IMG/VR virus record: IMGVR_UViG_3300044640_001495
Location: 1 to 64,000 of that record
DNA length: 64,000 bases
Direction: 5' to 3' (one strand)
The notes beneath the pieces were generated by a model. That model made no database searches. It saw only the letters and a list, made by a program, of their open reading frames with translations, and was not told the DNA's origin. Both the position numbers and the translations under genes were made by a program. Positions 34,556-60,829 of the stretch are shown piece after piece. Position 1 is the stretch's first letter, and each line of letters starts with the position of its first letter.

Positions 34556-36457
34556 ATGTCTAAGATCATCGGTATCGATTTAGGTACCACAAACTCATGT
34601 GTAGCTGTTATTGAAAACGGCATCCCCAAAGTAATTGAAAATGCAGAAGGTGCTAGAACAACACCTTCAATCGTTGCCTACGGCAAAGATGAAATTCTCG
34701 TAGGTGCTTCAGCAAAACGTCAATCAGTTACTAACCCCAAAAATACAATCTATGCTTCAAAGCGTTTGATTGGACGCAAGTTTAAAGAGGAAGCTGTTCA
34801 AAAGGACATCAACCTTATGCCCTACGAAATCATGGAAGCCAAGAATGGCGATGCATGGGTTCGTGCTAATGGTCAAGAGTTGGCGCCTCCACAAATCTCA
34901 GCAGAAGTTTTGCGTAAGATGAAAAAGACAGCGGAGGATTATCTAGGTCATGAAGTTACTCAAGCAGTTATCACAGTTCCTGCGTACTTTAACGACAGCC
35001 AAAGACAAGCTACTAAAGACGCTGGACAAATCGCAGGCCTGGAGGTACTCCGTATTATTAACGAGCCTACTGCGGCAGCTCTTGCTTATGGCGTTGATAA
35101 AGCTGATAAAAGAGATAGGAAAATTGCTGTTTACGATCTTGGTGGCGGTACATTCGATGTTTCGATCATCGAAATAGCCAACGTAGATGGAGACAAGCAG
35201 ATCGAAGTATTGAGCACAAACGGCGATACATTCCTTGGCGGTGAAGACTTTGACCAACGTATTATGGATTACTTGGTTGAAGAATTCCGCAAGGATCAAG
35301 GTGTTGATCTAACCAAAGATGTACTTGCTCTACAGCGTTTAAAAGAATCTGCTGAGAAGGCAAAAATTGAATTGTCTAGCTCTGCAAGCACAAGTGTTAA
35401 TTTGCCATACATCACAGCAGACGCAAGTGGCCCTAAGCACATGAATATCACTATTAGCCGTAGCAAGTTAGAACAGCTTGTTGACGAGTTAATCACTCGC
35501 TCAATTGAGCCATGTAAAGTTGCCATGAAAGATGCAGGTGTCACAGCCGCTGACATCGATGAAGTTATTCTTGTTGGTGGTATGACACGTATGCCAAAGG
35601 TACAAGAAGCCGTTGAAAAATTATTTGGCAAGGCACCACGTAAGGATGTTAATCCAGACGAAGCTGTTGCCGCAGGTGCCGCAGTACAAGGTGCTGTTCT
35701 CGGTGGCGATCGTACTGATGTGTTGTTGCTAGATGTGACTCCACTGAGTTTGGGTATTGAAACAATGGGCGGTGTGTTTGCAAAGGTTATTCAAAAGAAC
35801 ACAACCATTCCGACTAAGGGACAGCAGACATTCTCAACAGCAGAAGACAATCAACCTGCGGTGACTATCAAGGTATTCCAAGGTGAGCGTGATCTAGTAC
35901 AATACAACAAATTGCTAGGTGAATTCAATCTTGAAGGTATTCAACCGCAACGTCGTGGACAGCCGCAAATCGAAGTTACATTTGATATTGATGCTAACGG
36001 TATCATGAATATCTCGGCCAAGGACAAGAGCACAGGCAAAGAAAACAAGATCACTATTAAATCAGATAGCGGTCTAAGCAAAGAAGAAATTGAACGCATG
36101 GTACGTGAAGCTGAAGAAAATGCAGAGAGTGATCAAAAAGCTCGAACATTAATTGATGCTCGCAACCAAGCTGAAGCAACTGTACATGAAGTTAAAAAAG
36201 ATCTTGAAGAATTTAAAGATGAATTAACTGATACAGAAAAGACAGAAATCGAGACAGCAGTTAAATCAGTCGAAGACGCTATGAAAGAAGATGACGCTGA
36301 TAAAATTAAAGCTGAACTCGAAAAAGTTTTTCCGGCAATGAAAACATTGTTGGAGAAAAAGCAGGCCAAGGAACAGGCAGCTCAGGCGCCTCAACCAGAA
36401 GCCAAAGCAGATGACAATGTGGTAGACGCTACGTTTACAGAAACTAAGTCTAGCTAA
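34556..36457 (+). CDS. dnaK: Hsp70 chaperone DnaK
   Basis: [26 protein letters not shown] and VTFDIDANG motifs. Confidence 0.98.
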
Positions 36458-37574: not shown

Positions 37575-38126
37575 ATGAGCCTAAGAGAATTAACCAAAGA
37601 CAATCACACCAATGCAGAAAGACAGGAGTTTGTAAAAATACTGTTTTCAGGAACCATAGATCCCAAACTGTACGCTACATATCTCTACAATCAATTTCCT
37701 ATGTATGAGCTGTTAGAAGTATGTGCCATGCCGCATGGACTGCTGTCTGACATGCCAGGAATCTTACGGGCCAAGGCCATTAGAGCTGACTTTGAGGAAT
37801 TATGGGGATCAGACGAAGAAGATAGACCCAAAATGTGTGCAGTGGTAAAAGAGTATATGGATCATATTATGAAAATTAAAGATGATCCTAAATTGCTAAT
37901 GGCACACCTTTATGTACGACACATGGGCGATCTAGCTGGCGGACAAATGATTGCCAAAAAGGTGCCCGGGGCTGGCAAGTACTATCAATTTGAAGATGCC
38001 GATAGTCTAAAAGCAGCAGTTCGTTTAAAAATCGACGACAGCATGGCCGACGAAGCAAAAGTCTGTTTTGATTTTGCTACACAATTTTTTAAAGAGATGA
38101 TGGAAATTGCAAACATCAACAAGTAA
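37575..38126 (+). CDS. hemO: heme oxygenase
   Basis: LRELTKDNH.NAE (proximal His) and AHLYVRHMGDLAGGQ. Confidence 0.92.
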   Translation: MSLRELTKDNHTNAERQEFVKILFSGTIDPKLYATYLYNQFPMYELLEVCAMPHGLLSDMPGILRAKAIRADFEELWGSDEEDRPKMCAVVKEYMDHIMKIKDDPKLLMAHLYVRHMGDLAGGQMIAKKVPGAGKYYQFEDADSLKAAVRLKIDDSMADEAKVCFDFATQFFKEMMEIANINK

Positions 38127-38799
38127 AGTCTGGCAAACACTCATTGAAGTGCAAGAGCTGTTTATTGAACAGTTCAACAAAACCGGAAAGGAAGTATATG
38201 AAACGGGTATGGATCGCTTCAACAGCCCTGGTTGGGTTAATCGTGTTTGGACCAGTAGCAGTTATCGTAGGGCTCACGTTGATGTTGTGGATGCTAGAGA
38301 AACCAAAGGACTCTGGATGATGCACTGTTGCATCTTCCCGCATACACATAATCCTGCACCGATCTTTGGATTCGATGTAATTGCAGGCAAGAACAAGATC
38401 ACCGGGTGTTTCTATGATTACTCAGCTGCCGGCGATAAAGAACATGCTATGATGGATTGGTTTGCAGAAGAAGCACAAAAGCTAGAGTGGAATAAAACTC
38501 GCAAACTGCCAGATTGGGCAGAACGTATCTTTAGCCCTAGTATGGTAGCTGCTGGGAACGTTAGCGATGAAGAAGAACTAGCACAGATTATTGCCATGGC
38601 AAAAGAGGGCATACAGCACTATTTGAGCACGGTAGCAGAAACCAATAATACAGCTAACGATACTACAGAGGCACAGAACTACTACTGCGAAAATCAAAAG
38701 CAGAACCCGCATACACCACGTGTAATGGTTAGTTTAGGGCTTTCAGAAGAGGACGTTAAACATTTTATTCAAGAATGCCTGTTCCCTGAAATCAGCTAA
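38107..38799 (+). CDS. pcyX: ferredoxin-dependent bilin reductase, PcyX/PcyA type
   Basis: HVDVV (Asp where PcyA has Glu76), MMHCCIFP, PIFGFDV, LPDWA..IFS and QNPHT. Confidence 0.8.
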   Translation: MQTSTSKVWQTLIEVQELFIEQFNKTGKEVYETGMDRFNSPGWVNRVWTSSSYRRAHVDVVDARETKGLWMMHCCIFPHTHNPAPIFGFDVIAGKNKITGCFYDYSAAGDKEHAMMDWFAEEAQKLEWNKTRKLPDWAERIFSPSMVAAGNVSDEEELAQIIAMAKEGIQHYLSTVAETNNTANDTTEAQNYYCENQKQNPHTPRVMVSLGLSEEDVKHFIQECLFPEIS

Positions 38800-38808: not shown

Positions 38809-40233
38809 ATGAGAGCATTTGAAATAATTACAGAATCAGAAGGCGGGATTATCCGTCGTGCCCAAGAGGTTAGTCAGGGCAAAACTATCACGTTTGCTAA
38901 AGATGGTAAAAAAATTAACCTAGTTAGCACAACAGTTATTCCTGAAACTGAATTGAGATATGAAGTTCAAACTGATCTCGAACAAGGTTTAAAAGATGCT
39001 CTTGCAGCACTGGGCAATCCCACAGTATATTATTACAGTAAAGTGCAGGGAAAATCCGGAGCAGCATTAATTACCCTATGGGAAGACGAAAACAAGAAAT
39101 CAATTGCGTTCGTTAAATTTACTAATACAAAAAAAGCCGGAGCATTTCCAATTGCATGGACAAATGCAGATTTTGGAAGAGATACTGGCTACACACAAAC
39201 TGATAATAAAATTGCAGAACGTGCGCAGTTTGATATTAAACCCAACAAGTTGTTTGCTACAGACATTGATATTCCTGTTGCAACACTGCCTAAGCAGATT
39301 AAACAAAAAGAAGATCTATCTCCAGAGATTAATCAACAGATTAGTCAACTGTTGACAAATGTACTAACCAACTCAACAACTCCAGTTCCGGGTGCTGATC
39401 AATATATGACAACCTATGAAGTTGATCTTGGTGAAAGTGCAGCACCAATTGCACTAGTCACCGGTAATTTTGTCACCGGTAGTTATAGAGAAGCTGAAGC
39501 AGCATTATTAACTCCTATTGGGCTAACTTGGAACGGTATTAAATCTGTACTGTTTCCAGGCGGTGGATCAAATTTATTATACGACAGTTATCTAAGACTG
39601 AACAAAACTACTTCTTTAAAAGTAAGTAGCAAAGATAAAAAAGGTGGTGCTGCTGCCGCAGTCACAGGGCTATTAAAAGATATTCAAGAAAATCCAGAAC
39701 GTTTTTCAGAAGTCACAGACAAGCCCAACTATCAAGAGATTTTAAAAATTATTAACGTAATTGCATCTAACTCTGCAATTACAGGTCCATTAGAATTAGC
39801 AGTAAAATTTGGCTTTATTGACAGTACTGATGCGGCCAATGTCCAACAGAATTTAGGCCAGGCAATTAAATATAATCCGCAACTACCGTGGGCAACTACT
39901 CCCGGAGTACAGTCGGCATTTAAAAGAAAAGGTGCAAAGTTTGAAGACCCTGCATATGATATGGGATATCACGCATTGGCAGGTATCGCTGAACTAGTAG
40001 CAGATCATTTGAACAAGATGCCAGGTATGAGCGATTTCTTTAAAGCCGTACTTGAGAGATCAACAATGATCCAGGTAAAATCTAGAATTGCCAAAGGTAG
40101 TGGTGGCGCATTCTTTAACTCTTTCCAGGTCATTTATCCGCCAGTGTTCGACGGCATTATCAAAGTGGTCGCTGGCAACAACTACATGTCTACTCGTAGA
40201 CCAGTTGGCAAAATTAGTTTTAAAATCCCCTAA
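38809..40233 (+). CDS. large hypothetical protein, possibly capsid-internal; possible PD-(D/E)XK-like core
   Basis: MRAFEIITE N-terminus; YDSYL...KVSSK segment. Confidence 0.55.
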   Translation: MRAFEIITESEGGIIRRAQEVSQGKTITFAKDGKKINLVSTTVIPETELRYEVQTDLEQGLKDALAALGNPTVYYYSKVQGKSGAALITLWEDENKKSIAFVKFTNTKKAGAFPIAWTNADFGRDTGYTQTDNKIAERAQFDIKPNKLFATDIDIPVATLPKQIKQKEDLSPEINQQISQLLTNVLTNSTTPVPGADQYMTTYEVDLGESAAPIALVTGNFVTGSYREAEAALLTPIGLTWNGIKSVLFPGGGSNLLYDSYLRLNKTTSLKVSSKDKKGGAAAAVTGLLKDIQENPERFSEVTDKPNYQEILKIINVIASNSAITGPLELAVKFGFIDSTDAANVQQNLGQAIKYNPQLPWATTPGVQSAFKRKGAKFEDPAYDMGYHALAGIAELVADHLNKMPGMSDFFKAVLERSTMIQVKSRIAKGSGGAFFNSFQVIYPPVFDGIIKVVAGNNYMSTRRPVGKISFKIP

Positions 40234-40304: not shown

Positions 40305-40787
40305 ATGGTTAAGTTTATAATAGCCACCATATTAATGGCTACAGCATCAGTAGTCAATGGTGCAGAATTACAACACAATTTTAATAGTCCATCCTTTTCA
40401 GGGATTGGATATAGTTCTCACGTTCTAACACTCTATCAATTAGAGACACAGGCCAGAGACAAAAATAAAGCAGCAGCTGATGCTCTTAAAGCAAAGGCAG
40501 AGAGTGATGCATTAAACACTCCGCAGGCTAAGTTTCAAGCAAACTTAGAAAGTCGTATCTATTCACAGTTGGCCAAGCAGATTACAGATAGTTTGTTTGG
40601 TGTTAACGGTGTTCCAGTGTGTACTGCTAACAGTGCAGGTAATTGCGGACAAATGGAAGTTGCCGGTAATAACATCACCTGGAAAGTAGAAGGTACATTT
40701 ATTATTGTTAGAATTGAAAATGTATTAGATCCAAGACAATTTACAGAAATGAAGGTGCCAAGTGGCACATTTGGATTTGGAGGATAA
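40305..40787 (+). CDS. csgF: curli assembly protein CsgF-like
   Basis: Signal peptide then AELQHNFNSPSFSG.G...Q motif; LESRIYSQLAKQI..SLFG. Confidence 0.8.
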   Translation: MVKFIIATILMATASVVNGAELQHNFNSPSFSGIGYSSHVLTLYQLETQARDKNKAAADALKAKAESDALNTPQAKFQANLESRIYSQLAKQITDSLFGVNGVPVCTANSAGNCGQMEVAGNNITWKVEGTFIIVRIENVLDPRQFTEMKVPSGTFGFGG

Positions 40788-40790
40788 TAC

Positions 40791-42026
40791 ATGAAACAAA
40801 CACTATTATCCCTGGCCGTTGTAGCAGTATTGAGTGGGTGCGCATCAAGTTCGGCTATCAAAGAAAAAATAACTGGAAACCAGTTTGACGAACCGAAAGT
40901 CGAGTCTAGTAAATTTCTAAAGAAAGACTCTAATAAATTACAACCACCAGAAGGCGGACCGTTAACAGTGGCAGTGTATGGATTTAGAGATCTAACAGGG
41001 CAACGTAAAAGCCAGCCACTGATTGCGTCATTAAGTTCAGCTGTTACACAAGGTGCTGAAAACTATCTAATCAAGGCCCTACAGGATGTAGGTGATCAAC
41101 GCTGGTTCACAGTACTAGAACGTGTTGGCCTAGAGAACTTGATCAAAGAACGTCAAATGATTCGTCAAATGCGTGAGCAATACCAAGGCCGTGATGCCAA
41201 GATGTTGCCCCCAATGATGTTTGCCGGGATCATCATGGAAGGTGGCATTGTTGGCTACGATAGCAATACACTAACAGGCGGTAGTGGAGTAAGACTGTTT
41301 GGTATTGGGGCAAGCACACAATACCAATCAGACACTGTGACAGTTACCTTAAGAACAGTGAGCGTGTCTACAGGCGAAATTTTAACAACTGTGACAGTAA
41401 CTAAAACAGTGTTAAGTTATATGGACAAAGTGACATTATTGCGATTTGTTGGAGATGGCACAACTTTAGGTGCAAATGCAAATGCATTAGAGGGTGAGAT
41501 CGGCGGCAGCATAAATGAAAGTATCAACAAGGCAATCGACGTAGCTGTACAGGCAGCAGTGATTCAAACTATTAATGAAGGTGCTCGTAAAGGACACTGG
41601 GCATTTAAAAGCAATAAAGTAAGTTCTCCGGTTGCCGTTATTCCGGCGATACCTGCACCAGTAGTAATACCTGCACCAGTAGTAATACCTGCACCAGTAG
41701 TAATATCAGTACCAGTAGTAGAGGAGAAGAAAGATGTCGTGGTTCAATCACAAGCCAAACCCGAAACCAAAACCGAAGCCGTATCCAGTGCCCCCGCAGA
41801 AATAAAGAAAGAAGTTGTACCGGTTGAAAAACTTTCAGGTGAGATGATTTTAAAGGAAGCTTCTTACATTTATAAAGAGCCCGACCTAACAAGTCAAAAA
41901 ACTTGGCAGTTTAAGAAAGGTGCTTTAGTTACAATTATAGGACAAGAGGGTGATTGGGTAGCAGTCAGTGACTCACAAAAACGAAAAGGATTTGTTAATA
42001 AGGATGTACTGGTTAACAAACCTTAA
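40791..42026 (+). CDS. csgG: curli secretion channel CsgG-like lipoprotein with C-terminal Pro/Val linker and SH3-like domain
   Basis: LSG-C lipobox; VAVYGFRDLTGQRK, SSAVTQGA, LERVGLENLIKERQMIR, EGGIVGYD and VTVTLRTVSV.TGEI. Confidence 0.9.
   Translation: MKQTLLSLAVVAVLSGCASSSAIKEKITGNQFDEPKVESSKFLKKDSNKLQPPEGGPLTVAVYGFRDLTGQRKSQPLIASLSSAVTQGAENYLIKALQDVGDQRWFTVLERVGLENLIKERQMIRQMREQYQGRDAKMLPPMMFAGIIMEGGIVGYDSNTLTGGSGVRLFGIGASTQYQSDTVTVTLRTVSVSTGEILTTVTVTKTVLSYMDKVTLLRFVGDGTTLGANANALEGEIGGSINESINKAIDVAVQAAVIQTINEGARKGHWAFKSNKVSSPVAVIPAIPAPVVIPAPVVIPAPVVISVPVVEEKKDVVVQSQAKPETKTEAVSSAPAEIKKEVVPVEKLSGEMILKEASYIYKEPDLTSQKTWQFKKGALVTIIGQEGDWVAVSDSQKRKGFVNKDVLVNKP
41649..41720 (+). repeat. 18-bp coding tandem repeat (IPAPVV x3 plus one degenerate unit)
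   Basis: atacctgcaccagtagta x3, then atatcagtaccagtagta. Confidence 0.9.
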
Positions 42027-42029
42027 TGG

Positions 42030-42077
42030 TGTTGGAATTTTAACATGTTGAAATTTTAACATGTTGAAATTTTAACA
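42030..42077 (+). repeat. three tandem 16-bp quasi-palindromes TGTT-N8-AACA
   Basis: tgttggaattttaaca, tgttgaaattttaaca, tgttgaaattttaaca in the csgG-curlin intergenic region. Confidence 0.92.
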
Positions 42078-42220
42078 GCGGCATTTAATTTCTAGAGTAC
42101 AGAGATTAAATAAAATTACAAGAAGTAAGTCTACGGAGAGGAGTAGATTAGAGAAGTGGTATAATTATAGGTCAATGACCAGGAACTTGTCAGCAAACAA
42201 TAAACTGACATTTTAAAAAA

Positions 42221-43036
42221 ATGAAACAAACAATGACAGGCGGTTGTGGGTTGTCGAGAAAATTACTCACAGTGATGCTGATGAGCTTTGCCACCATAAG
42301 TGGTGCTCAGACAGCAACAGGTCCTAACAAGGTTTATATCGAACAAGTGGGTAGTAGCAATACTATCACAATTGAACAAGTTGGCGGGACTAACAATGTT
42401 GGCGGCGTTACTACAACTGTAGCAACGACAGTAGCAGGAACAGGTATTACTACACTGACTCCAGACGCACCGAGTGCTACTAACTATGGAACTATTACCG
42501 GAAGCACAAACATAGTTGACATTACACAAACAGGAAATGCTAACAGTAGCCAATACAATATTCGTGGAAGTAATAACAGCTACACTACTAATATGTTAGG
42601 CAATGGTAATCAAACTAGATTAACTATTGGCAATACCAACAACGCTACAAACAGCCAAAACGTTATTACAGAACAAATTATCGGTAATAACAATATGATT
42701 CTACAAGATCTAGTTGGTAGCAATATTACTACTAACACAGTTTTGGATGGAGATAATAACCAAGTTACTAGTAGTTTGTTAAGCAGCAGAGGTAGTGTAT
42801 CAAATGTAGCTAATGGAAACGCTAACGTGTTCAACATCCAGCAATTAGATGCAGCGGGTGCTAACGGACATGTTCTTGCTATGATGACCACAGGCGACTA
42901 CAACAGCATCACCACACAGCAACAAGGCACCAACGATACCACAGTTAATATACAAACACAGGGTAGCAACAACACTATCACAGTTCGTACAAGTAGTTCA
43001 GCTATTGTATCTCCAGCCACAGCGATTGCGAGATAA
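42221..43036 (+). CDS. curlin-repeat protein (CsgA/CsgB-like)
   Basis: Signal peptide; repeated x-Q-x-G-x-x-N units (IEQVGSSN, ITQTGNAN, QQQGTND, QTQGSNN); Asn/Thr/Gly-rich. Confidence 0.8.
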   Translation: MKQTMTGGCGLSRKLLTVMLMSFATISGAQTATGPNKVYIEQVGSSNTITIEQVGGTNNVGGVTTTVATTVAGTGITTLTPDAPSATNYGTITGSTNIVDITQTGNANSSQYNIRGSNNSYTTNMLGNGNQTRLTIGNTNNATNSQNVITEQIIGNNNMILQDLVGSNITTNTVLDGDNNQVTSSLLSSRGSVSNVANGNANVFNIQQLDAAGANGHVLAMMTTGDYNSITTQQQGTNDTTVNIQTQGSNNTITVRTSSSAIVSPATAIAR

Positions 43037-43038
43037 TT

Positions 43039-44133
43039 ATGCGTGTCTTGTTGTTAGCCCTACTGCTAACAGTGGCCAGCCCTTCTTGGGCTGGCATTGG
43101 CACGGTTTCAGAAAACAAAGGCACAGCCTGTGAAGTTGAACGCAATAAGAAAAAGATGTCAGGAGTTAAGGGTGCTGAAATTGAAAGCATGGACACTTAT
43201 ACAACCGGTGCTTGTGTAAGTAATATAACATTCAAAGATGATACCAAAGTCAAAGTTACAGAAAACAGCAGATTGCTTATCGACGATTTTGTTTTCGATC
43301 CTAAGAAATCAGATGCAGGCAAGCTCGCGCTCAAAGTTGGTATGGGCACTGTCCGATACGCTAGCGGACAAATTGCTAAAAATAATCCGCAACAGGTAAA
43401 CATCAAAACTCCAACAGCTACAGTAGCAGTGCGTGGCACTGATTTCACTATGACTGTGGATGAAACTGGGCAAAGTCTTATCATGCTGGTTCCTAGTTGT
43501 AAAGACGAAAAAGACGTTAAACAATTTGAACTAGATGAACAACGATGTAAGGTTGGCAGTATCACAGTGACTACAGGCATTGGATCAGTGACCTTAGACA
43601 AGGCATTCGAAGCTACCTATGTCACCAGTGCTTCAATGATGCCAACTTCCCCAGTTATTGTCAATACCGTTGAAGGCAAGATAGGTAATAACTTAATCAT
43701 TGTTAAGCCTCAAGAAGTCTTGCAGGCAATTAAAGATGCCGGCAGATCAAAACGTGATACTGAATTAGAAGAACTCGAGGCAGACGCCCAACGACAAATA
43801 GCTATGCGTGTTGAAAAAGCCAACGAAAAAAGCGACCCTGTACTATTGCCAGATACATTTTCTGATGGTAAGAAAGGATGTAATCCAAGTACTACTGTTT
43901 GCGTGGCATGGGAAAAGAACGACTCTCCTGATATACAAAGTAAAGGCAAAGGTACAGCCTATAGAAGTAATACAGATCATTATGCTGAAGTTAAAACCAC
44001 AGGCTATGATTCAAACACATTTGTGTCTATAAGCCACAATGATCAATATGCGTTTACGTTTGTTGGTAGCGGAGATCCAGGCGGTAATGTAGTAAACATT
44101 GTACAAAAGACTGGAGTGTTAAGACGTCCATGA
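43039..44133 (+). CDS. FecR-domain exported protein
   Basis: Signal peptide; ITFKDDTKVKVTENSRLLIDDF, GTVRYASG and IKTPTATVAVRGTDF. Confidence 0.85.
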   Translation: MRVLLLALLLTVASPSWAGIGTVSENKGTACEVERNKKKMSGVKGAEIESMDTYTTGACVSNITFKDDTKVKVTENSRLLIDDFVFDPKKSDAGKLALKVGMGTVRYASGQIAKNNPQQVNIKTPTATVAVRGTDFTMTVDETGQSLIMLVPSCKDEKDVKQFELDEQRCKVGSITVTTGIGSVTLDKAFEATYVTSASMMPTSPVIVNTVEGKIGNNLIIVKPQEVLQAIKDAGRSKRDTELEELEADAQRQIAMRVEKANEKSDPVLLPDTFSDGKKGCNPSTTVCVAWEKNDSPDIQSKGKGTAYRSNTDHYAEVKTTGYDSNTFVSISHNDQYAFTFVGSGDPGGNVVNIVQKTGVLRRP

Positions 44134-45785
44134 AACGAATAATTTTTTTATTGTTATTATTCTGCTCTAACGCATTTGGCGCCCTAACAGATATAAAGTT
44201 TGGACGATACCAAATTGCAGACAGCCAATGGAATGTCAGTGCCTGTTTGAATACAACAACCTGCCAAATTTACAGTAAGCAACCTGGTACTATGTACAAA
44301 ATACCATGGTTCAATGGAACTTGGAGTTGGCAGTCAGGACAGTATGTACAATTTGGGTTGACAGGGAATGCCAGCTATCCCTACGAAGGCAAAGTTTACA
44401 ACAGCAACGGCACACTAGCTGGTACTATAGGCACAGGTAAAATTGTCAACATGGGTCCAGATTATTTCTTCTTTGTAGGCAATGACAACAATACAGGACA
44501 GCTATTCAGTGGCAGCTCGGGTATGTCAACTACCAGCGGAGTATCGTGGACTGGCGCACTTAATCCGACTATACAACAGGCCGATACATACGCTAACGCC
44601 ACGTATTCTACAGTACCGTTAAGTTCAGGGCAGACTGCTACATCTACTCCTAGTAATGCGGCGCCGCCGCCACCTGCGCCTACCGCAATTTACAATAACA
44701 GTTCTGGTGTGTATGTTACCAGAGCAATACCAACTAGCAATAATAGTCCAAGCAATGAAGGTCCTACTAATGCGTTTGATAACAATCCCTATACCAAGTA
44801 CTTAAACTTCGATAAACAAAATGCTGGAGTTACTATCCAATTAAATGCTGGGCGAGTTGTTACTAGTTTTAAATTAACTACAGCTAATGATGCTGTAGAG
44901 CGAGATCCAACAAGTTATAAACTCTACGGATCAAATGACGGATCAACATGGACATTAATTCAACAAGGCGCACTATCTTTGTCCGATAATAGATTTAGTG
45001 TTAGTAGCGATATCGCAGTAACTAACTCTACGGCCTATGTTTATTATTTTATGATATTCCCTTCTATTAAAAACAATGCTGGTAATAGCGTACAAATTGC
45101 AGAGATTACCTATTTCTATGATGCTAATAGTACAACCACAAGTACAGCAACTAGCAATACTATTGTTGATCCAACAACCGCCGCCGCAAATACGTTATGT
45201 TGCGGTGGATCAGCAGCCGCATTTAATGCTAACACAACAAACACGGCTAAAGTTTTAACATTCGTTAATAGAACAACTGCCGATAGCCAAGTACACATAG
45301 AACAGATCGGCACACAAAACGTAGTTGAAGTAAATCAAAGCGGGACTAAAAATAATTATGTCGAATATTACGGCAATGGTCTAAGCAATGATATTAATAT
45401 CGCACAAACAGGAAATGCTACAACACAGGCAAATTATGTTGACTTGAGAGTTGTGGGTAATTTTAACTTAGTAGATCTACAACAGACCAGTACTGGTGGT
45501 ACTAAAGGAATATTTGCTGATGTCAGCGGCAATAACAATAGTTTGCTGGTACAACAAAAAGACGGCGGCAGTCACTATGCTGAAATCACACTAAGTGGCG
45601 GTAATAAGAATGTCGACGTACTGCAACAAGGCAGCGCCAGTCATATGGCCAAAGTTAATCTAAGCGGTACACCTACTGATCTAAGTCTAACACAAAGTGG
45701 CAGTACTCAAAACTACTATTCAATCACTCACAACTGCACCACTGTAGGCGGTTGTGCTAAAATTACTGTGACACAGGGACAATAA
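44130..45785 (+). CDS. exported protein with discoidin/F5-8-like domain and C-terminal curlin repeats
   Basis: EGPTNAFDNNPYTKYL...RDPTSYKLYGSNDGSTW discoidin-like segment; C-terminal IEQIGTQN, NQSGTKNN, AQTGNAT and LQQGSASH repeats. Confidence 0.72.
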   Translation: MKRIIFLLLLFCSNAFGALTDIKFGRYQIADSQWNVSACLNTTTCQIYSKQPGTMYKIPWFNGTWSWQSGQYVQFGLTGNASYPYEGKVYNSNGTLAGTIGTGKIVNMGPDYFFFVGNDNNTGQLFSGSSGMSTTSGVSWTGALNPTIQQADTYANATYSTVPLSSGQTATSTPSNAAPPPPAPTAIYNNSSGVYVTRAIPTSNNSPSNEGPTNAFDNNPYTKYLNFDKQNAGVTIQLNAGRVVTSFKLTTANDAVERDPTSYKLYGSNDGSTWTLIQQGALSLSDNRFSVSSDIAVTNSTAYVYYFMIFPSIKNNAGNSVQIAEITYFYDANSTTTSTATSNTIVDPTTAAANTLCCGGSAAAFNANTTNTAKVLTFVNRTTADSQVHIEQIGTQNVVEVNQSGTKNNYVEYYGNGLSNDINIAQTGNATTQANYVDLRVVGNFNLVDLQQTSTGGTKGIFADVSGNNNSLLVQQKDGGSHYAEITLSGGNKNVDVLQQGSASHMAKVNLSGTPTDLSLTQSGSTQNYYSITHNCTTVGGCAKITVTQGQ

Positions 45786-45802
45786 AACAGCATAAATATT
45801 TC

Positions 45803-47845
45803 ATGCTGAAAAAAATCCTAACTAGTCCTTGGACTGCCCTATTAACATTGGCACTTATTGTAAGTATAAGAATCGCCGATCCTGTCTTTGTAGAAAGTGT
45901 AAGACTACGCTACTTTGACACACTGATTACTAATAAAACTCCAACTGCCAATAACATCTATACGGTAAACATAGATGAAGCAGCATTGGACAAATATGGC
46001 CAGTGGCCTTTACCAAGGGCAGAGTATGCAAAAATTATTAAAGATCTTTATGATCGTGGTGCTGGCCTTGTTGTGCTCAATGTTATCATGGCTGAGCCTG
46101 ATCGCACTGGTGGCGATGCTGTTCTCGCAACGGCCCTAAAACAATATCCAGTTGTAATGGGCAGCGTACCATCACAAAAAACTAAGAACTCTCCTCGCAA
46201 TCCAGGTAGTGCTGTACTAGGTCCAGAGTGGCAGGATCAAATTGTACAATACCCGGGACTTATTGCCAATGTACCTCAGTTAGAAAATGCAGCAGCAGGC
46301 ATTGGTATCGTTAGTACACTGCCAGAAGTAGACGGTGTTAATCGACGACTGCCCCTAGTTGTATCCGTTGATGGTAAATTATATCCCAGTATGTCTATGG
46401 AAGCACTTAGAGTCGCAGCTGGTGATTCAACCTTCCAAGTCAAGCTCAATGAAAATGGTGTTGAGAAAATGCGCATACCCAAGTTTGGTCCTATTACAAC
46501 AGATGCGTTAGGTCGTGTATGGATCGATTGGAGTCAAGAAAACCAACAGGCGAGTCTTTTGGACTTGCCCAAAAACTTTAATGGTGCTATAGTTATAGTA
46601 GGTCCAACAGCCGCAGGCATTGCTAATCCTTTGCCTACAGCTAAAGGTGCAGTGTGGCCGCAGGATGTACAAGCGGCAGCAATGGCAACTATGATCAACG
46701 GAGTGGTAATTCAACGTCCCGACTATGCCGACGGAGTTGAAATCCTAGCATTACTAGTATTCGGCATATTGTTAATTTTCTTATCGAGGTGGACTTATGT
46801 TGGAATTGGTTCTGCTGTGGTTATTGTTGGTGCCGTCGTTCCTGGTACTATGTACGCTTTCAGTAATTGGCTCATCCTATCAGATGCGACTGCAATCACG
46901 TTTGGGCTTGTTATCGTTGCTCTTCATACTTATGGCGTTAAATTTGTAAGCGAGTTCTTACAGAAGCAGGCCATAAAGAAACAGTTTGCGGGTTATTGCT
47001 CTAAAGAAGTTGTAGAGCTACTACAAAAAGATCCAGACTTAATCAAGCGTGGTGTACGCAAAGATGTATCAGTTATGTTCAGTGACCTGCGTGGCTTTAC
47101 TCCTATTGGTGAACACTATGGTGATGATGTAGGCGGACTAGGCAAGTATATGAACGGCTACATGGATGCTATCAGTCGTCCTATCATGAACAACAACGGC
47201 ATGATATTAAAGTATGTAGGTGATGCGAGTATGCACATACATGGTGCTCCTATCGAAGACACCAATCATGCTAGAACTATTGTTGCTGTTGGCCTAGAGA
47301 TGCTGGATGCTGTTGACGAATACACAAAACTGATGGAAGCACAAGGATTACCACCTGCCGCAATGGGTTGGGGTTGCAATACTGGTATTGGCTTTATTGG
47401 CGAGATGGGATCAACTGACAGACACGGTTATGACATCTTAGGTGATATGGTGTCAACCGCGGCACGACTAGAAGCACGTTGTAAGGCCTATGGTGTACTA
47501 TGTATTATTGGTGCTGAAACATACAATCGTACCAAAGACGACTTCTTTTATCTAATGATAGATAACTTACAGCCTAAAGGAAAAACTGTGGCAGACTTGA
47601 TCTATACAGTATTACGTACTAAGGGTGCAGACTACACTAGAGATAAGATAGCACACGAAGTGATGCATGACTTGTACCGACAGAAAAAGTTTGACGAAGC
47701 TGCCGCTATGTGTGCAAAGCTAAAGGGCAACTTTGGTGGACAAATGGACAAGTACTACAAAATCTGGATCGAGCGTTGCGACTTTATGAAACTGCAAGAT
47801 CTAGGCGACAACTGGAACGGCGAGTTTGTTGCTCACGAGAAGTAA
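45803..47845 (+). CDS. CHASE2 sensor plus class III adenylate/guanylate cyclase
   Basis: VNIDEAALDKYGQWP.PR and EVDGVNRRLPL CHASE2 motifs; three TM helices; VMFSDLRGFT, LKYVGD and GDMVSTAARLE. Confidence 0.92.
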   Translation: MLKKILTSPWTALLTLALIVSIRIADPVFVESVRLRYFDTLITNKTPTANNIYTVNIDEAALDKYGQWPLPRAEYAKIIKDLYDRGAGLVVLNVIMAEPDRTGGDAVLATALKQYPVVMGSVPSQKTKNSPRNPGSAVLGPEWQDQIVQYPGLIANVPQLENAAAGIGIVSTLPEVDGVNRRLPLVVSVDGKLYPSMSMEALRVAAGDSTFQVKLNENGVEKMRIPKFGPITTDALGRVWIDWSQENQQASLLDLPKNFNGAIVIVGPTAAGIANPLPTAKGAVWPQDVQAAAMATMINGVVIQRPDYADGVEILALLVFGILLIFLSRWTYVGIGSAVVIVGAVVPGTMYAFSNWLILSDATAITFGLVIVALHTYGVKFVSEFLQKQAIKKQFAGYCSKEVVELLQKDPDLIKRGVRKDVSVMFSDLRGFTPIGEHYGDDVGGLGKYMNGYMDAISRPIMNNNGMILKYVGDASMHIHGAPIEDTNHARTIVAVGLEMLDAVDEYTKLMEAQGLPPAAMGWGCNTGIGFIGEMGSTDRHGYDILGDMVSTAARLEARCKAYGVLCIIGAETYNRTKDDFFYLMIDNLQPKGKTVADLIYTVLRTKGADYTRDKIAHEVMHDLYRQKKFDEAAAMCAKLKGNFGGQMDKYYKIWIERCDFMKLQDLGDNWNGEFVAHEK

Positions 47846-58124: not shown

Positions 58125-58213
58125 GGACGAGTGCGCTGAATTGGTTGAAGGCAACGGACTGTAAATCCGCCACATAAGAAACATTGTAGGTTCGACTCCT
58201 ACCTCGTCCACCA
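58125..58213 (+). tRNA. tRNA-Tyr(GTA)
   Basis: Acceptor ggacgag/ctcgtcc, loop CT-GTA-AA, long variable arm, CCA. Confidence 0.9.
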
Positions 58214-58222
58214 AACGAATGG

Positions 58223-58251
58223 TTGACTTTTTTTTGGATTGGTGTTATACT
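58223..58251 (+). promoter_or_regulatory. sigma70-type promoter
   Basis: TTGACT-N17-TATACT. Confidence 0.75.
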
Positions 58252-58281
58252 ATTAATACTGTGAACTTAAAAGGAAATCAA

Positions 58282-58476
58282 ATGCAATCGTATCGTGTTT
58301 ATGTTGAAGTGGGTTCGTATGCAGGTGAAGGTACCAGCGGTGCTTTTCAAACTGAGAGCCTTCGACAATTTGAAACTGTAGTAAATGCCCAGACATCCGG
58401 AGATGCTGTGCGTATAGCAGAAGCCCAATATGGTGGCCAAGAACGGTGCCGTGTCACGTTCCGCGGCGTTGCTTAA
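58282..58476 (+). CDS. small hypothetical protein within the tRNA array
   Basis: AAGGA RBS; own promoter; 64 aa. Confidence 0.6.
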   Translation: MQSYRVYVEVGSYAGEGTSGAFQTESLRQFETVVNAQTSGDAVRIAEAQYGGQERCRVTFRGVA

Positions 58477-58484
58477 CAATTTTA

Positions 58485-58559
58485 GGTCTGTTCGTATAGA
58501 GGTTATTACTGCGGATTGTCTATCCGCTTACGGGGGTTCGATTCCCCCACAGACCGCCA
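58485..58559 (+). tRNA. tRNA-Asp(GTC)
   Basis: gcgga-TT GTC TA-tccgc; T-loop TTCGATT; CCA. Confidence 0.92.
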
Positions 58560-58566
58560 AGTTTAT

Positions 58567-58643
58567 TCCTCGGTAGCACAGTTGGTAGTTGCGCGGCACT
58601 GTTAATGCCGATGTCGGAAGTTCGAGCCTTCCCCGGGGAGCCA
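58567..58643 (+). tRNA. tRNA-Asn(GTT)
   Basis: cggca-CT GTT AA-tgccg; CCA. Confidence 0.92.
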
Positions 58644-58648
58644 ATAAT

Positions 58649-58724
58649 GTATCCTTAGCTCAATTGGCAGAGCGCTGGTCTCCAAAACCAGAGGTTCGCG
58701 GTTCGAGGCCGTGAGGGTACGCCA
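58649..58724 (+). tRNA. tRNA-Trp(CCA)
   Basis: ctggt-CT CCA AA-accag; CCA. Confidence 0.92.
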
Positions 58725-58732
58725 AGTTTTAT

Positions 58733-58807
58733 GGACCGTTCGTCTATCGGTTAGGACACTAGGTTTTCATCCTGGTAAGAGGGGTTCGACTCCCCTACGG
58801 TCTTCCA
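58733..58807 (+). tRNA. tRNA-Glu(TTC)
   Basis: ctagg-TT TTC AT-cctgg; CCA. Confidence 0.92.
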
Positions 58808-58814
58808 AATTTAT

Positions 58815-58892
58815 GTGGCGGTGGCAGAGAGGCCCATTGCAACGGATTGCAAATCCGTAAAATCGTGAGTTCAAATCTCACCCGCCACTCCA
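58815..58892 (+). tRNA. tRNA-Cys(GCA)
   Basis: acgga-TT GCA AA-tccgt; U73; CCA. Confidence 0.9.
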
Positions 58893-58942
58893 AACATGGC
58901 TCCACTCGTTCGACATAGTCGATGCTGTGGAGTTTTTCTTTT

Positions 58943-59023
58943 GCCCCGGTAGACAAATTGGCAAAGTCGTCTCTCTCAAAAAGAGAAATTTAAATGCGGG
59001 TTCAACTCCCGCCCGGGGTACCA
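58943..59023 (+). tRNA. tRNA-Leu(CAA)
   Basis: tctct-CT CAA AA-agaga; small variable arm; CCA. Confidence 0.88.
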
Positions 59024-59028
59024 ATCAT

Positions 59029-59118
59029 GGAAGTATGGCTGAGCATGGCTTAAGGCAGCAGTCTTGAAAACTGAAGGCTCGAAAGGGTCCGTGGGTTCGA
59101 ATCCTACTACTTCCGCCA
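59029..59118 (+). tRNA. tRNA-Ser(TGA)
   Basis: cagt-CT TGA AA-actg; long variable arm; G73; CCA. Confidence 0.9.
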
Positions 59119-59240
59119 ACTATGGACGAATCATTTGAGCAGTGTTAGATGCACACGGGTTACCTTTCCTAACCGCCAAGTGGCGTACCCCTGCCGAATG
59201 ACCTGGGCGTGGCAGTGATAATGATTCGTCCGCCTAATAC

Positions 59241-59315
59241 AGCCTATTAGCTCAGTGGTAGAGCACCGTCTTGATAAGGCGGGGGTCCTTGGATCGTTCC
59301 CAAGATAGGCTACCA
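59241..59315 (+). tRNA. tRNA-Ile(GAT) with non-canonical T-loop ATCGTTC
   Basis: ccgtc-TT GAT AA-ggcgg; acceptor agcctat/ataggct; CCA. Confidence 0.88.
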
Positions 59316-59337
59316 ATTTTTTAAAAGGAGATCTGTC

Positions 59338-59382
59338 ATGACTAGTGACAAGAGTGATAAGATAACGGGGGTGAAACTTTAA
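59338..59382 (+). CDS. 14-aa mini-ORF overlapping the 5' end of tRNA-Lys
   Basis: AAGGAG RBS; MTSDKSDKITGVKL*. Confidence 0.35.
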   Translation: MTSDKSDKITGVKL

Positions 59383-59440
59383 GGTGAAGTAACTGGCTTT
59401 TAACCAGTAAAACTCGGATCGTTCCCGAGCACCCCTACCA
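59367..59440 (+). tRNA. tRNA-Lys(TTT) with non-canonical T-loop ATCGTTC
   Basis: actgg-CT TTT AA-ccagt; CCA. Confidence 0.85.
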
Positions 59441-59521
59441 TATAAAAACACATTAGGCCTGGTCATAGACCATCGCGGGTATAGTGCCTTCCGTGCCGCG
59501 GACTTGAGTGTGTTTTTATAT

Positions 59522-59597
59522 GGTAATATAGCATAGTGGCTAATGCAGTTGCTTCATACGCAGCCTATCGTTGGTTCGAGTCCAACTATTACCACCA
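59522..59597 (+). tRNA. tRNA with CAT anticodon (elongator Met or lysidine-Ile2)
   Basis: gttgc-TT CAT AC-gcagc; paired G1-C72, so not initiator-like; CCA. Confidence 0.88.
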
Positions 59598-59603
59598 AGT
59601 TGT

Positions 59604-59677
59604 TGGGGGTTAGTTAAATGGTATAACCGCGGATTTTGATTCCGCTATTAAAGGTTCGATTCCTTTACCCTCTGCCA
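59604..59677 (+). tRNA. tRNA-Gln(TTG)
   Basis: gcgga-TT TTG AT-tccgc; U1-U72 mismatch; CCA. Confidence 0.88.
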
Positions 59678-59685
59678 AAAAATAA

Positions 59686-59760
59686 CGGTCCTTAGTTCAA
59701 TGGATAGAATGCTTGGCTTCGAACCAAGCGGTGTGGGTTCGATTCCTGCAGGACCGGCCA
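59686..59760 (+). tRNA. tRNA-Arg(TCG)
   Basis: cttgg-CT TCG AA-ccaag; CCA. Confidence 0.9.
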
Positions 59761-59761
59761 A

Positions 59762-60436: not shown

Positions 60437-60447
60437 GTATTTATTTT

Positions 60448-60521: not shown

Positions 60522-60591
60522 AAATTAGTAAAATTCTATTACGTAAGATCCAAGCAAAGTGCAAGGATTGGCCATAACAAGGAGATATAAA

Positions 60592-60827: not shown

Positions 60828-60829
60828 AT

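What the first reader, a model, noticed from the sequence alone, without database searches (positions are those of the whole stretch)
40305..47845. Phage curli-type export system coupled to a FecR protein and a CHASE2 adenylate cyclase: candidate surface-amyloid/cAMP signalling system
Seen: a co-oriented six-gene run of csgF-like, csgG-like (lipobox, extra SH3-like tail), curlin, FecR-domain, discoidin+curlin and CHASE2-cyclase genes, all exported or membrane-bound. Established: CsgG/CsgF secrete curlin amyloid, FecR domains relay trans-envelope signals, and CHASE2 cyclases in Sinorhizobium signal through a Crp-like regulator. Curli genes alone have been noted in some T4-like marine phages, so the parts are not wholly new. 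Inference: infected cells build a phage-specified fibre or sensor on the surface, and its assembly or ligand state is transmitted via FecR/CHASE2 to cAMP. This could drive aggregation, exclusion of competing phages or lysis timing. No csgE or csgD is visible.
Basis: partly seen in the sequence, partly recalled or inferred. Interest (0 to 1): 0.88.

Follow-up and report, generated by a model that had tools for sequence, protein, structure and literature searches.

The report
Phage curli export plus cAMP sensor
A large environmental phage carries a six-gene cassette for a curli-type outer-membrane pore, two amyloid-type fibre proteins (one tipped with a sugar-binding module) and a periplasmic sensor pair that makes cAMP; the cassette is real and tightly conserved, but was already described in marine phages in 2022 and its function is still untested.

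Summary
Window 40305-47845 holds six co-oriented genes, all exported or membrane-bound. They encode CsgF; a CsgG lipoprotein with a C-terminal SH3 tail; a curlin-repeat protein; a periplasmic FecR-domain protein; a CBM32/discoidin lectin fused to curlin repeats; and a CHASE2 class III cyclase.

The gene order is nearly invariant in more than 100 viral contigs. All 64 cyclase-anchored loci had CsgF, CsgG and FecR upstream, and 43 of 45 CsgG-anchored loci had the cyclase downstream.

It is not new as a kind. The same order is annotated in Pelagibacter phage HTVC008M and Methylophilales phage Melnitz. Wittmers et al. 2022 (PMC9599517) described the phage curli module with FecR and adenylate cyclase.

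- The carrier is a roughly 353-kb jumbo-type phage.
- The cyclase sensor is a CHASE2 domain.
- FecR plus CHASE2-cyclase is a bacterial gene pair of its own, never next to curli genes in the 72 loci sampled.
- The SH3 tail and the swappable lectin heads.
- A derived Asp/Ser active-site pair in the cyclase.

Best reading: infected cells display lectin-tipped curli fibres, and the FecR/CHASE2 pair couples an envelope signal to cAMP. That coupling is inferred, not shown. Verdict: new member of a known kind, moderate interest.

The parts
40305..40787 (+). CsgF-like secreted protein (160 aa) with a signal peptide and a conserved N-terminal F-x-x-P-x-F-x-G-x-G motif
   Evidence: Pfam CsgF 5e-8. phrog_35372 2.8e-28. 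Signal peptide. The family profile's best PDB hit is E. coli CsgF (6L7A) through the N-terminal pore-inserting segment, but weakly, E=0.023. F26, P29, G33 and G35 are invariant in 24 relatives.
40791..42026 (+). CsgG-like outer-membrane lipoprotein pore (411 aa) with a Pro/Val-rich linker and a C-terminal bacterial SH3 domain
   Evidence: Pfam CsgG 1.2e-46; SH3_4/SH3_3 at residues 359-407. Matches E. coli CsgG structures at 2.8e-45 over residues 3-274. Lipobox LSGC. The SH3 tail occurs in 13 of 24 diverse relatives and is absent from Melnitz and HTVC008M.
42027..42220 (.). Intergenic spacer: 2.5 tandem copies of a ~16-nt unit form a long hairpin right after the csgG stop, followed by a palindromic extended -10-like TGGTATAAT. 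Possibly a terminator/attenuator or operator plus an internal promoter.
   Evidence: MFE -50.5 kcal/mol against -28.9 +/- 3.7 in shuffles (z -5.9). Conserved in close relatives. A TATAAT match was listed, but promoter and terminator scans as a whole were not above chance.
42221..43036 (+). Cur1: secreted curlin-repeat protein (271 aa), the CsgA/CsgB-type fibre subunit
   Evidence: Signal peptide; T/N/G/S/Q-rich; 11/22-residue periodicity. The family profile hits curlin structure 8C50 at 1.7e-14 and CsgA 8ENQ at 8e-4. Pfam Curlin_rpt scores 19.9 bits, just under the cut-off of 20.7.
43039..44133 (+). Periplasmic FecR-domain protein (364 aa): cleavable signal peptide, FecR/PupR-like beta domain (about 20-200), helical charged linker, small C-terminal beta domain
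   Evidence: Pfam FecR 1.1e-9. AF2 model has pLDDT 76, and 85-91 in the N-domain. Foldseek matches the PupR cell-surface-signalling domain 6OVK at 1.8e-4; the C-terminal domain resembles 5IX9 only at E=0.027. There are 39-46 invariant columns in the N-domain.
44130..45785 (+). Cur2: secreted three-part protein (551 aa): N-terminal beta domain, CBM32/F5-8 type C lectin module, C-terminal curlin beta-solenoid ending in a conserved Cys pair
   Evidence: Pfam F5_F8_type_C 2e-9. Cur1 HMM matches residues 377-549 at 2.8e-9, and 79 of 81 family members match. The AF2 model shows 14 regular strands at 386-549 and a beta-sandwich at 185-345. Foldseek matches galactose-binding CBM32 modules, TM about 0.75, E down to 1.6e-8. 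N-terminal modules vary among relatives: F5/8C in 11 of 24, PA14 in 3 of 24.
45803..47845 (+). CHASE2 sensor fused to a class III nucleotide cyclase (680 aa): TM, periplasmic CHASE2, three TMs, cytoplasmic catalytic domain
   Evidence: Pfam CHASE2 1.1e-38 and Guanylate_cyc 1.1e-12. Full-length phrog_35576 3.6e-188. Matches solved adenylate cyclases at up to 5.5e-21. Metal Asp428/Asp474, Lys470 and Arg555 are invariant or near-invariant in 82 relatives (Asp474 is gapped in one); Asp544 and Ser551 replace the bacterial Ser/Thr and Asn. It is the most conserved gene of the cassette, median 77% identity.

Best explanation
This is a new copy of the phage-borne type VIII (curli) secretion module with FecR and adenylate cyclase, previously described in marine pelagiphages. 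Here it sits in a jumbo-type environmental phage.

Proposed mechanism:
1. All six products leave the cytoplasm through Sec. This is shown by their signal peptides, lipobox and TM helices.
2. The CsgG lipoprotein forms the outer-membrane pore and CsgF caps it. This follows from homology.
3. Cur1 and Cur2 are secreted through the pore and polymerise through their curlin repeats into surface fibres. Cur2 decorates the fibres with a CBM32-type sugar-binding head. This is inferred from sequence and model.
4. The periplasmic FecR-domain protein and the inner-membrane CHASE2 cyclase form a sensor pair captured once from bacteria. The pair converts an envelope or surface cue into cAMP in the infected cell. 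The pairing is supported by gene neighbourhood in bacteria. The cue, and any link to the fibre, are inferred.
5. The likely outcomes are adhesion or aggregation of infected cells, or altered surface properties, with cAMP reporting on or tuning that state. This is speculative.
For: - Domain identities.
- Export signals and topology.
- Same order annotated in Melnitz and HTVC008M. Published module.
- Linkage: 64 of 64 cyclase-anchored loci have CsgF, CsgG and FecR; 43 of 45 CsgG-anchored loci have the cyclase.
- FecR lies between the two curlin genes, with 2-nt and -4-nt junctions, which suggests co-translation in one unit.
- Bacterial FecR homologues are adjacent to CHASE2 cyclases in 13 of 72 loci, with cNMP-binding proteins or a Slam/DUF2860-like outer-membrane barrel nearby in some.
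- All cassette-borne cyclases are split from the bacterial ones by a 100/100 branch.
- Catalytic metal, Lys and Arg residues are invariant or near-invariant, and the cyclase is the most conserved gene.
- Precedent: S. meliloti NsrA (outer-membrane barrel) to CHASE2 cyclase to cAMP/Clr.
Against: - There is no experimental evidence of fibres. The Melnitz authors saw no clumping of infected cells.
- No CsgE-like gate or adaptor is present.
- The cyclase has Ser at the transition-state Asn position (72 of 82 relatives), so its activity is unproven.
- No cAMP receptor was found in the window or cassette flanks (weak test).
- In bacteria the FecR/CHASE2 pair was never found with curli genes.
- In relatives, unrelated cargo genes are inserted between Cur2 and the cyclase, so the two halves may act independently.
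- The SH3 tail and the FecR C-terminal type do not co-vary.
Confidence: 0.55

Rival explanations
1. Two independent modules share a hypervariable island. A curli adhesion/fibre module (CsgF, CsgG, Cur1, Cur2) and a separate FecR/CHASE2 cAMP module manipulate host physiology, with no signal passing between them.
For: Bacterial FecR/CHASE2-cyclase pairs exist without any curli genes. Variable cargo is inserted between Cur2 and the cyclase in many relatives. Some podophage versions lack the second curlin and the cyclase. The SH3 tail and FecR C-terminus show no co-variation.
Against: FecR is interleaved between the two curlin genes with overlapping or 2-nt junctions. Co-occurrence is near-absolute in phages of different families. 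All cassette cyclases form a single clade, so the combination has been kept since capture.
Confidence: 0.22
2. Pore-only function. CsgG, with or without CsgF, acts as a gated secretin or pinholin-like channel that times lysis (the proposal of Buchholz et al. 2022 for Melnitz). The other genes are accessory or irrelevant.
For: The Melnitz paper models a narrowed CsgG/CsgF pore, saw no clumping, and states that csgA and csgB are missing.
Against: csgA/B-type genes are in fact present. The Cur1 profile hits curlin structures and Cur2 carries curlin repeats; both have signal peptides and are conserved. An outer-membrane pore cannot by itself depolarise the inner membrane (established knowledge of envelope architecture). 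The hypothesis does not explain the lectin heads, FecR or the cyclase.
Confidence: 0.08
3. Import or nutrient sensing. The ungated CsgG pore admits cofactors or iron-siderophore-like molecules, and FecR senses them, by analogy with ferric-citrate signalling.
For: No CsgE gate is present. The FecR name and fold. The idea was raised by Wittmers et al. and Zaragoza-Solas et al..
Against: The protein lacks the cytoplasmic anti-sigma domain and TM helix of true FecR regulators; it has a cleavable signal peptide instead. No TonB-dependent transducer or ECF sigma factor is in the cassette. Its bacterial relatives pair with CHASE2 cyclases, not iron transporters. The idea does not explain curlin or lectin proteins.
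Confidence: 0.05
4. The curlin-like proteins are virion fibres or tail components, not CsgG substrates.
For: The discoidin part of Cur2 weakly matches a PHROG annotated as tail protein (2e-05). In Melnitz and HTVC008M, baseplate and tail genes lie just downstream on the other strand.
Against: Both proteins have Sec signal peptides and so leave the cytoplasm, where virions are assembled. They always sit between csgG and the cyclase in phages of different morphotypes.
Confidence: 0.02

Closest known systems
Pelagiphage type VIII secretion (curli) module with FecR and adenylate cyclase (Wittmers et al. 2022, PMC9599517; annotated in Pelagibacter phage HTVC008M and Methylophilales phage Melnitz)
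   Same: Same six genes in the same order: CsgF, CsgG, curlin, FecR, second curlin protein, cyclase. No CsgE or CsgD. The cyclases form one clade.
   Different: Only 33-47% protein identity to the cultured marine phages. The carrier is a ~353-kb contig whose exonuclease is closest to 349-368-kb jumbo myophages, not a ~145-kb pelagimyophage or a podophage. CsgG has an SH3 tail and Cur2 a CBM32 head, neither mentioned in the papers. No histidine kinase lies upstream; instead there is an unrelated 474-aa ORF. HTVC008M keeps the ancestral Ser/Asn cyclase pair, whereas the window has Asp/Ser.
E. coli curli system (CsgG-CsgF pore, CsgA/CsgB fibre, CsgE, CsgC, CsgD)
   Same: CsgG is homologous over its whole pore domain (2.8e-45). 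CsgF shares the N-terminal pore-binding motif. Secreted curlin-repeat proteins are present.
   Different: No CsgE, CsgC or CsgD. By the alignment read against E. coli mature-protein numbering recalled from memory, the CsgG constriction-loop residues differ (Gln/Ser/Leu where E. coli has Tyr51/Asn55/Phe56); this mapping is a lead, not a test. There is an extra SH3 domain. One fibre protein carries a lectin head. The cassette is linked to FecR and a cyclase.
Sinorhizobium meliloti NsrA - CyaK/CyaD1/CyaD2 (CHASE2 cyclases) - Clr pathway
   Same: An inner-membrane CHASE2 class III cyclase receives a signal through an outer-membrane beta-barrel protein and raises cAMP. A FecR-domain periplasmic protein (SMc02177) belongs to the same regulon.
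   Different: No NsrA homologue was identified here; the outer-membrane component would be CsgG/CsgF. No Clr/Crp-like receptor was found in the phage sequence available. Active-site residues differ.
Bacterial FecR-domain protein + CHASE2-cyclase gene pair
   Same: Homologous FecR domain (E 1e-16 to 1e-28 to the phage HMM) next to a CHASE2-cyclase of the same architecture.
   Different: Never accompanied by CsgG, CsgF or curlin. Often accompanied by cNMP-binding proteins, which the phage cassette lacks. The bacterial cyclases have Ser/Thr plus Asn.
FecR/PupR anti-sigma regulators of cell-surface signalling
   Same: The periplasmic domain fold matches PupR 6OVK, E 1.8e-4.
   Different: No cytoplasmic anti-sigma domain and no TM anchor. 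No ECF sigma factor or TonB-dependent transducer partner in the cassette.

Membership tests
Curli / type VIII secretion system | CsgG-family outer-membrane lipoprotein pore | tested here: met
   Pfam CsgG 1.2e-46. Matches solved CsgG at 2.8e-45 over residues 3-274. Lipobox Cys17 is invariant.
Curli / type VIII secretion system | CsgF with the N-terminal segment that binds inside the CsgG barrel | tested here: met
   Pfam CsgF 33.6 bits against a cut-off of 25.8. The profile's best PDB hit is CsgF, through the N-terminal motif, but weak at E=0.023. The motif residues are invariant.
Curli / type VIII secretion system | Secreted curlin-repeat subunit(s) of CsgA/CsgB type | tested here: met
   The Cur1 profile hits 8C50 at 1.7e-14 and CsgA 8ENQ at 8e-4. 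The Cur2 C-terminus matches the Cur1 HMM at 2.8e-9. The AF2 model shows a strand-turn-strand solenoid. Both have signal peptides.
Curli / type VIII secretion system | CsgE periplasmic adaptor/gate and CsgD regulator (gammaproteobacterial type) | tested here: not met
   No additional ORF in the cassette, and no such Pfam hit among the six products or three neighbours. Also absent in the published phage modules. These two are not universal outside Gammaproteobacteria.
Curli / type VIII secretion system | Formation of extracellular amyloid fibres | not testable with these tools
   Needs Congo red/ThT binding and electron microscopy.
Phage T8SS-FecR-cyclase module (Wittmers 2022) | Gene order CsgF-CsgG-curlin-FecR-(second curlin)-adenylate cyclase in a phage genome | tested here: met
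Phage T8SS-FecR-cyclase module (Wittmers 2022) | Histidine kinase immediately upstream (podophage versions) | tested here: not met
   The upstream 474-aa ORF has no Pfam, PHROG, PDB or phage-database match and no kinase domain. The myophages Melnitz and HTVC008M also lack it.
Class III adenylate cyclase | Two metal-binding Asp, an adenine-specifying Lys-Asp (or Lys-Thr/Ser) pair, and a transition-state Arg | tested here: met
   Asp428, Asp474, Lys470, Asp544 and Arg555. The metal, Lys and Arg positions are conserved in all 82 relatives, except that Asp474 is gapped in one.
Class III adenylate cyclase | Transition-state-stabilising Asn | tested here: not met
   Ser551 in the window and in 72 of 82 cassette cyclases. 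Asn is present in all 15 cyclases from the genuine bacterial loci (L172-L219) and in HTVC008M. Activity therefore needs an assay.
CHASE2 sensor proteins | CHASE2 domain between an N-terminal TM and a cluster of three TMs, followed by a cytoplasmic output domain | tested here: met
   Pfam CHASE2 1.1e-38 at residues 16-322. Hydrophobic segments at about 12-30 and 309-382.
FecR-type anti-sigma regulators | Periplasmic FecR-domain fold | tested here: met
   Pfam 1.1e-9. Foldseek matches PupR 6OVK at 1.8e-4 and BDI_1681 at 7.6e-4.
FecR-type anti-sigma regulators | N-terminal cytoplasmic anti-sigma domain, a single TM anchor, and a partner ECF sigma factor and TonB-dependent transducer | tested here: not met
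   The protein begins with a cleavable signal peptide followed directly by the FecR domain. No sigma factor or transducer is among the neighbours. It is a FecR-domain protein, not a FecR regulator.

The most novel reading that the evidence does not exclude
A virus-encoded trans-envelope sensing pathway. Lectin-tipped amyloid fibres that the phage builds on the infected cell report contact with glycans, neighbouring cells or particles, or report their own assembly state. The signal would pass through the CsgG pore region and the periplasmic FecR-domain protein to the CHASE2 cyclase. Infected-cell cAMP, and through it phage development, lysis timing or aggregation, would then respond to the cell's surroundings. 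The Asp/Ser active-site pair and the CsgG SH3 tail would be phage-specific adaptations of this relay.
Probability: 0.2. Interest if true: 0.8.

Novelty: new member of a known kind. Interest (0 to 1): 0.4.

Why it matters
Curli-type secretion genes with FecR and a cyclase are among the most widespread multi-gene accessory modules in aquatic phages. Thousands of close FecR homologues were found in metagenomes, and the module was detected at all 65 ocean stations surveyed by Wittmers et al.. No function has been demonstrated.

This copy shows that the module also lives in jumbo-type phages outside the pelagiphage groups. The second fibre protein is a modular lectin display device. The FecR/cyclase half is a bacterial CHASE2 sensor pair captured once. 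Together these results turn a vague statement of association into specific experiments: lectin ligand, FecR, then cAMP.

If the coupling is real, it would be a rare case of a phage installing its own environmental sensing pathway in the host envelope.

Tried and rejected
- Nucleotide-level matches to deposited phages: none. Only protein-level relatives exist.
- FecR C-terminal ~70 residues as a curlin-like repeat that would dock on the fibre: suggested by eye but rejected. hhalign probability was 8%, and 0 of 92 FecR proteins hit the curlin HMM. The AF2 model shows a small beta domain whose only resemblance, to the 5IX9 surface-anchoring domain, is at E=0.027.
- CsgG SH3 tail co-varying with FecR C-terminal type or cyclase active-site type: no association.
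- The upstream 474-aa ORF as the histidine-kinase equivalent or a seventh cassette gene: no domain or structural match, absent from Melnitz and HTVC008M, and present in only about a quarter to a third of loci.
- Promoter and terminator consensus scans: not above shuffled expectation. The T4 late-promoter motif TATAAATA is absent near the cassette.
- Protein search with the FecR-like protein in the 5.8-billion-sequence database: swamped by near-identical metagenomic relatives and uninformative about cellular origin. Replaced by the genome scan.
- Search for a cNMP-binding receptor in the window and flanks: negative, but it used a single-sequence query and has low sensitivity.
- The top genome hits in MAGs of unrelated phyla (L163-L169) were not accepted as evidence of bacterial curli-FecR-cyclase operons. 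Those that carry a cyclase nest inside phage clades, so they are probably mis-binned phage contigs or prophages.
- The FecR phylogeny did not finish in time. The NsrA paper was not available.

Full report
**Observation.**
All are on the + strand, with gaps of 3, 194, 2, -4 and 17 nt. Pfam assigns the following:
- 40305-40787: CsgF (5e-8).
- 40791-42026: CsgG (1.2e-46) with a C-terminal bacterial SH3 domain.
- 42221-43036: a marginal Curlin_rpt hit (7e-4).
- 43039-44133: FecR (1.1e-9).
- 44130-45785: F5/8 type C (2e-9).
- 45803-47845: CHASE2 (1.1e-38) plus a class III cyclase domain (1.1e-12).

CsgF, Cur1, FecR and Cur2 have signal peptides. CsgG has an LSGC lipobox. The cyclase has the topology TM, periplasmic CHASE2, three TMs, cytoplasmic catalytic domain.

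**Firming up the weak assignments.**
- A profile of 26 Cur1 relatives hits the cryo-EM curlin structure 8C50 at 1.7e-14 and E. coli CsgA (8ENQ) at 8e-4.
- The Cur1 HMM matches residues 377-549 of Cur2 at 2.8e-9, and matches 79 of 81 Cur2-family proteins.
- The AlphaFold model of Cur2 (pLDDT 72) has three folded parts joined by disordered linkers: an N-terminal beta domain, a beta-sandwich at about 185-345, and 14 regular strands at 386-549.
- The sandwich superposes on galactose-binding CBM32 modules, with TM about 0.75 and E down to 1.6e-8.
- Among 24 diverse relatives the curlin C-terminus is conserved but the head varies: F5/8 type C in 11 and PA14 in 3.
- Cur2 is therefore a lectin displayed on a curlin stalk.
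- The CsgF family profile finds E. coli CsgF as its best PDB hit, though weakly (E=0.023). The match runs through the N-terminal motif that inserts into the CsgG barrel, and that motif is invariant in the family.
- CsgG aligns with solved CsgG over the whole pore domain. The SH3 tail is present in 13 of 24 relatives.

**The FecR-like protein.**
Its AlphaFold model (pLDDT 76; 85-91 in the N-terminal domain) matches the periplasmic cell-surface-signalling domain of the anti-sigma regulator PupR (6OVK, E 1.8e-4). It lacks the cytoplasmic anti-sigma domain and membrane anchor of true FecR regulators. It starts with a cleavable signal peptide. It is a soluble periplasmic, or possibly secreted, FecR-domain protein. 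A helical charged linker and a small C-terminal beta domain follow. My idea that this C-terminal part is curlin-like was not supported.

**The cyclase.**
- Alignment with solved adenylate cyclases and with 82 relatives shows both metal-binding Asp, the adenine-specifying Lys and the transition-state Arg to be conserved (Asp474 is gapped in one sequence).
- Two positions covary. The window and 72 of 82 relatives have Asp544 with Ser551. Ten relatives, including HTVC008M, have Thr or Ser with Asn.
- All 15 CHASE2-type cyclases from the genuine bacterial loci (L172-L219) have Ser/Thr with Asn.
- The Asp/Ser pair is therefore a derived state of one phage sub-lineage. It puts Ser where the canonical transition-state Asn sits.
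- The protein is the most conserved in the cassette, at median 77% identity. That argues for function, but its activity needs an assay.

**Linkage.**
- tblastn against deposited phages finds the CsgG-like and cyclase genes together only in Pelagibacter phage HTVC008M and the four Methylophilales phage Melnitz isolates.
- In both, the annotated order is CsgF, CsgG, curlin, FecR/hypothetical, curlin/hypothetical, cyclase.
- In IMG/VR, 160 loci were fetched with CsgG or the cyclase as bait, and the same order dominates.
- To avoid ascertainment bias, only loci with at least 8 kb on the relevant side were counted. Of 45 CsgG-anchored loci, 45 have CsgF, Cur1 and FecR, 44 have Cur2 and 43 have the cyclase. 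Of 64 cyclase-anchored loci, all 64 have CsgF, CsgG and FecR.
- The slot between Cur2 and the cyclase is variable and can hold up to about 6 kb of other genes.

**Prior knowledge.**
- Zaragoza-Solas et al. 2020 reported the curli operon in pelagimyophages and proposed 'sibling capture'.
- Buchholz et al. 2022 proposed that CsgG/CsgF time lysis in Melnitz and stated that csgA and csgB are missing.
- Wittmers et al. 2022 identified the curlin genes and described FecR, a second curlin gene and an adenylate cyclase as conserved parts of the module in both podo- and myo-pelagiphages. They noted the absence of CsgE, found expression in metatranscriptomes, and inferred cross-family transfer.
- It is the only held paper that combines curli, phage, FecR and adenylate cyclase.
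- None of these papers mentions CHASE2, SH3, discoidin or lectin domains, or freshwater lineages.

**Origin of the sensor half.**
- A scan of one genome per bacterial species with a FecR-family alignment gave 79 loci.
- The seven best (31-50% identity) lie in MAGs from unrelated phyla. Six of them hold most or all of the cassette, and L163 is a 1.6-kb FecR-only fragment. Their cyclases nest within phage clades, so they are most likely mis-binned phage contigs or prophages.
- The other 72 are mainly Alphaproteobacteria, Elusimicrobiota and Myxococcota. Thirteen carry a CHASE2-cyclase within 10 kb of the FecR gene, six of them directly adjacent. None carries CsgG, CsgF or curlin.
- Neighbours include a cNMP-gated MscS channel, Crp-sized cNMP-binding proteins and a Slam/DUF2860-like outer-membrane barrel.
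- A maximum-likelihood tree separates all 24 cassette-borne cyclases from the 13 bacterial ones by a 100/100 branch. That is compatible with a single capture.
- FecR plus CHASE2-cyclase is therefore a cellular sensor pair that phages fused to a curli module.
- The S. meliloti system shows that CHASE2 cyclases can receive signals through an outer-membrane barrel (NsrA) and raise cAMP for the Crp-like regulator Clr. A FecR-domain periplasmic protein is a Clr target.

**Carrier.**
- The window is the first 64 kb of a 353,123-bp IMG/VR contig. Other cassette-bearing contigs reach 357-372 kb.
- The window encodes RNR, DnaK, a PAAR-CHAP protein, 2OG-Fe(II) oxygenases, an exonuclease, a ClpP-like head protease, 23 tRNAs and a permuted beta-type tmRNA.
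- The closest cultured relatives of the exonuclease are 349-368-kb jumbo myophages such as Serratia phage BF and Cronobacter phage GAP32. None of these carries the cassette.
- So the module has reached a third kind of phage.

**Mechanism.**
Shown or strongly supported:
- Export of all six products.
- A CsgG/CsgF-type pore.
- Two curlin-repeat substrates, one with a CBM32 head.
- A FecR-domain protein and CHASE2 cyclase that are partners by conserved neighbourhood in bacteria.

Inferred:
- Fibre formation on infected cells.
- cAMP synthesis.
- A functional link between fibre or pore and sensor.

The interleaving of fecR between the two curlin genes, with 2-nt and -4-nt junctions, and the near-absolute co-occurrence both favour a link. 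The bacterial independence of the two halves and the variable cargo before the cyclase favour the rival of two neighbouring but separate modules. The lysis-pore, import and virion-component readings explain fewer of the genes.

**Verdict.**
The finding is real and well described, but the kind of system is already published. This is a new, divergent member with variant features: the SH3 tail, modular lectin heads, the Asp/Ser active site, the jumbo-phage carrier, and a structured spacer between pore and fibre genes. Interest is moderate. It is high only if the surface-to-cAMP relay is demonstrated.

Noticed in passing
window 42027-42220: The spacer between csgG and the first curlin gene begins with 2.5 tandem copies of a ~16-nt unit that form a long hairpin (whole spacer -50.5 kcal/mol, z -5.9). 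It also contains a palindromic TGGTATAAT-type extended -10. It is conserved in close relatives, although spacer length varies from overlap to 221 nt across the family.
   Followed up: partly
window 38809-40233: A 474-aa cytoplasmic ORF lies directly upstream of csgF and has no Pfam, PHROG, PDB or deposited-phage match. It is conserved upstream of the cassette in about a quarter to a third of related loci and has an invariant S-S-K motif with nearby acidic residues. Function unknown.
   Followed up: partly
window 37575-38799: Overlapping heme oxygenase (Pfam 8e-25) and ferredoxin-dependent bilin reductase (4e-19) genes sit just upstream. This is a pigment-biosynthesis pair usually associated with cyanophages, here in a phage whose tmRNA is of the betaproteobacterial type.
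   Followed up: no
window 24880-25227: A phage-encoded permuted (two-piece) tmRNA matches Rfam beta_tmRNA (102 bits against a gathering score of 84) and tmRNA_permuted (120 bits). ARAGORN predicts a tag peptide ending ...KVALAA. It is a possible host clue. Melnitz also encodes a two-piece tmRNA.
   Followed up: partly
window 58125-62198: An array of 23 tRNA genes covers most amino acids, consistent with a very large phage genome.
   Followed up: no
window 34556-36457; 17325-20755; 21742-22704: A full-length DnaK/Hsp70 (2e-257), class I ribonucleotide reductase large and small subunits, and a PAAR-CHAP fusion protein are present.
   Followed up: no
L012:15544-19854; L126:5929-9990; L080:14252-20590 and other loci: In many relatives the slot between the second curlin gene and the cyclase holds extra cargo. 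This includes further signal-peptide proteins and, judged only from conserved N-terminal motifs and not tested by any domain search, enzymes that resemble an LpxH-type phosphoesterase and a glycosyltransferase.
   Followed up: partly
L163-L169 (MAG contigs assigned to Actinobacteria, Luteolibacter, Rhodobacteraceae, Bacteroidetes, Pelagibacter, Flavobacteriaceae): Six of these contigs (L164-L169) carry most or all of the phage cassette, and L163 is a 1.6-kb FecR-only fragment, inside genome bins of unrelated phyla. Their cyclases nest within phage clades, so they are probably mis-binned phage contigs or prophages.
   Followed up: partly
L172:13753-15207, L184:7416-8873, L179:11452-12150, L194:8254-9711: Bacterial FecR/CHASE2-cyclase pairs are often flanked by cNMP-binding proteins (an MscS-cNMP channel, Crp-sized proteins) and in one case by a Slam/DUF2860-like outer-membrane barrel. 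This suggests a three- or four-part cellular envelope-to-cAMP module that does not seem to have been described as such.
   Followed up: partly
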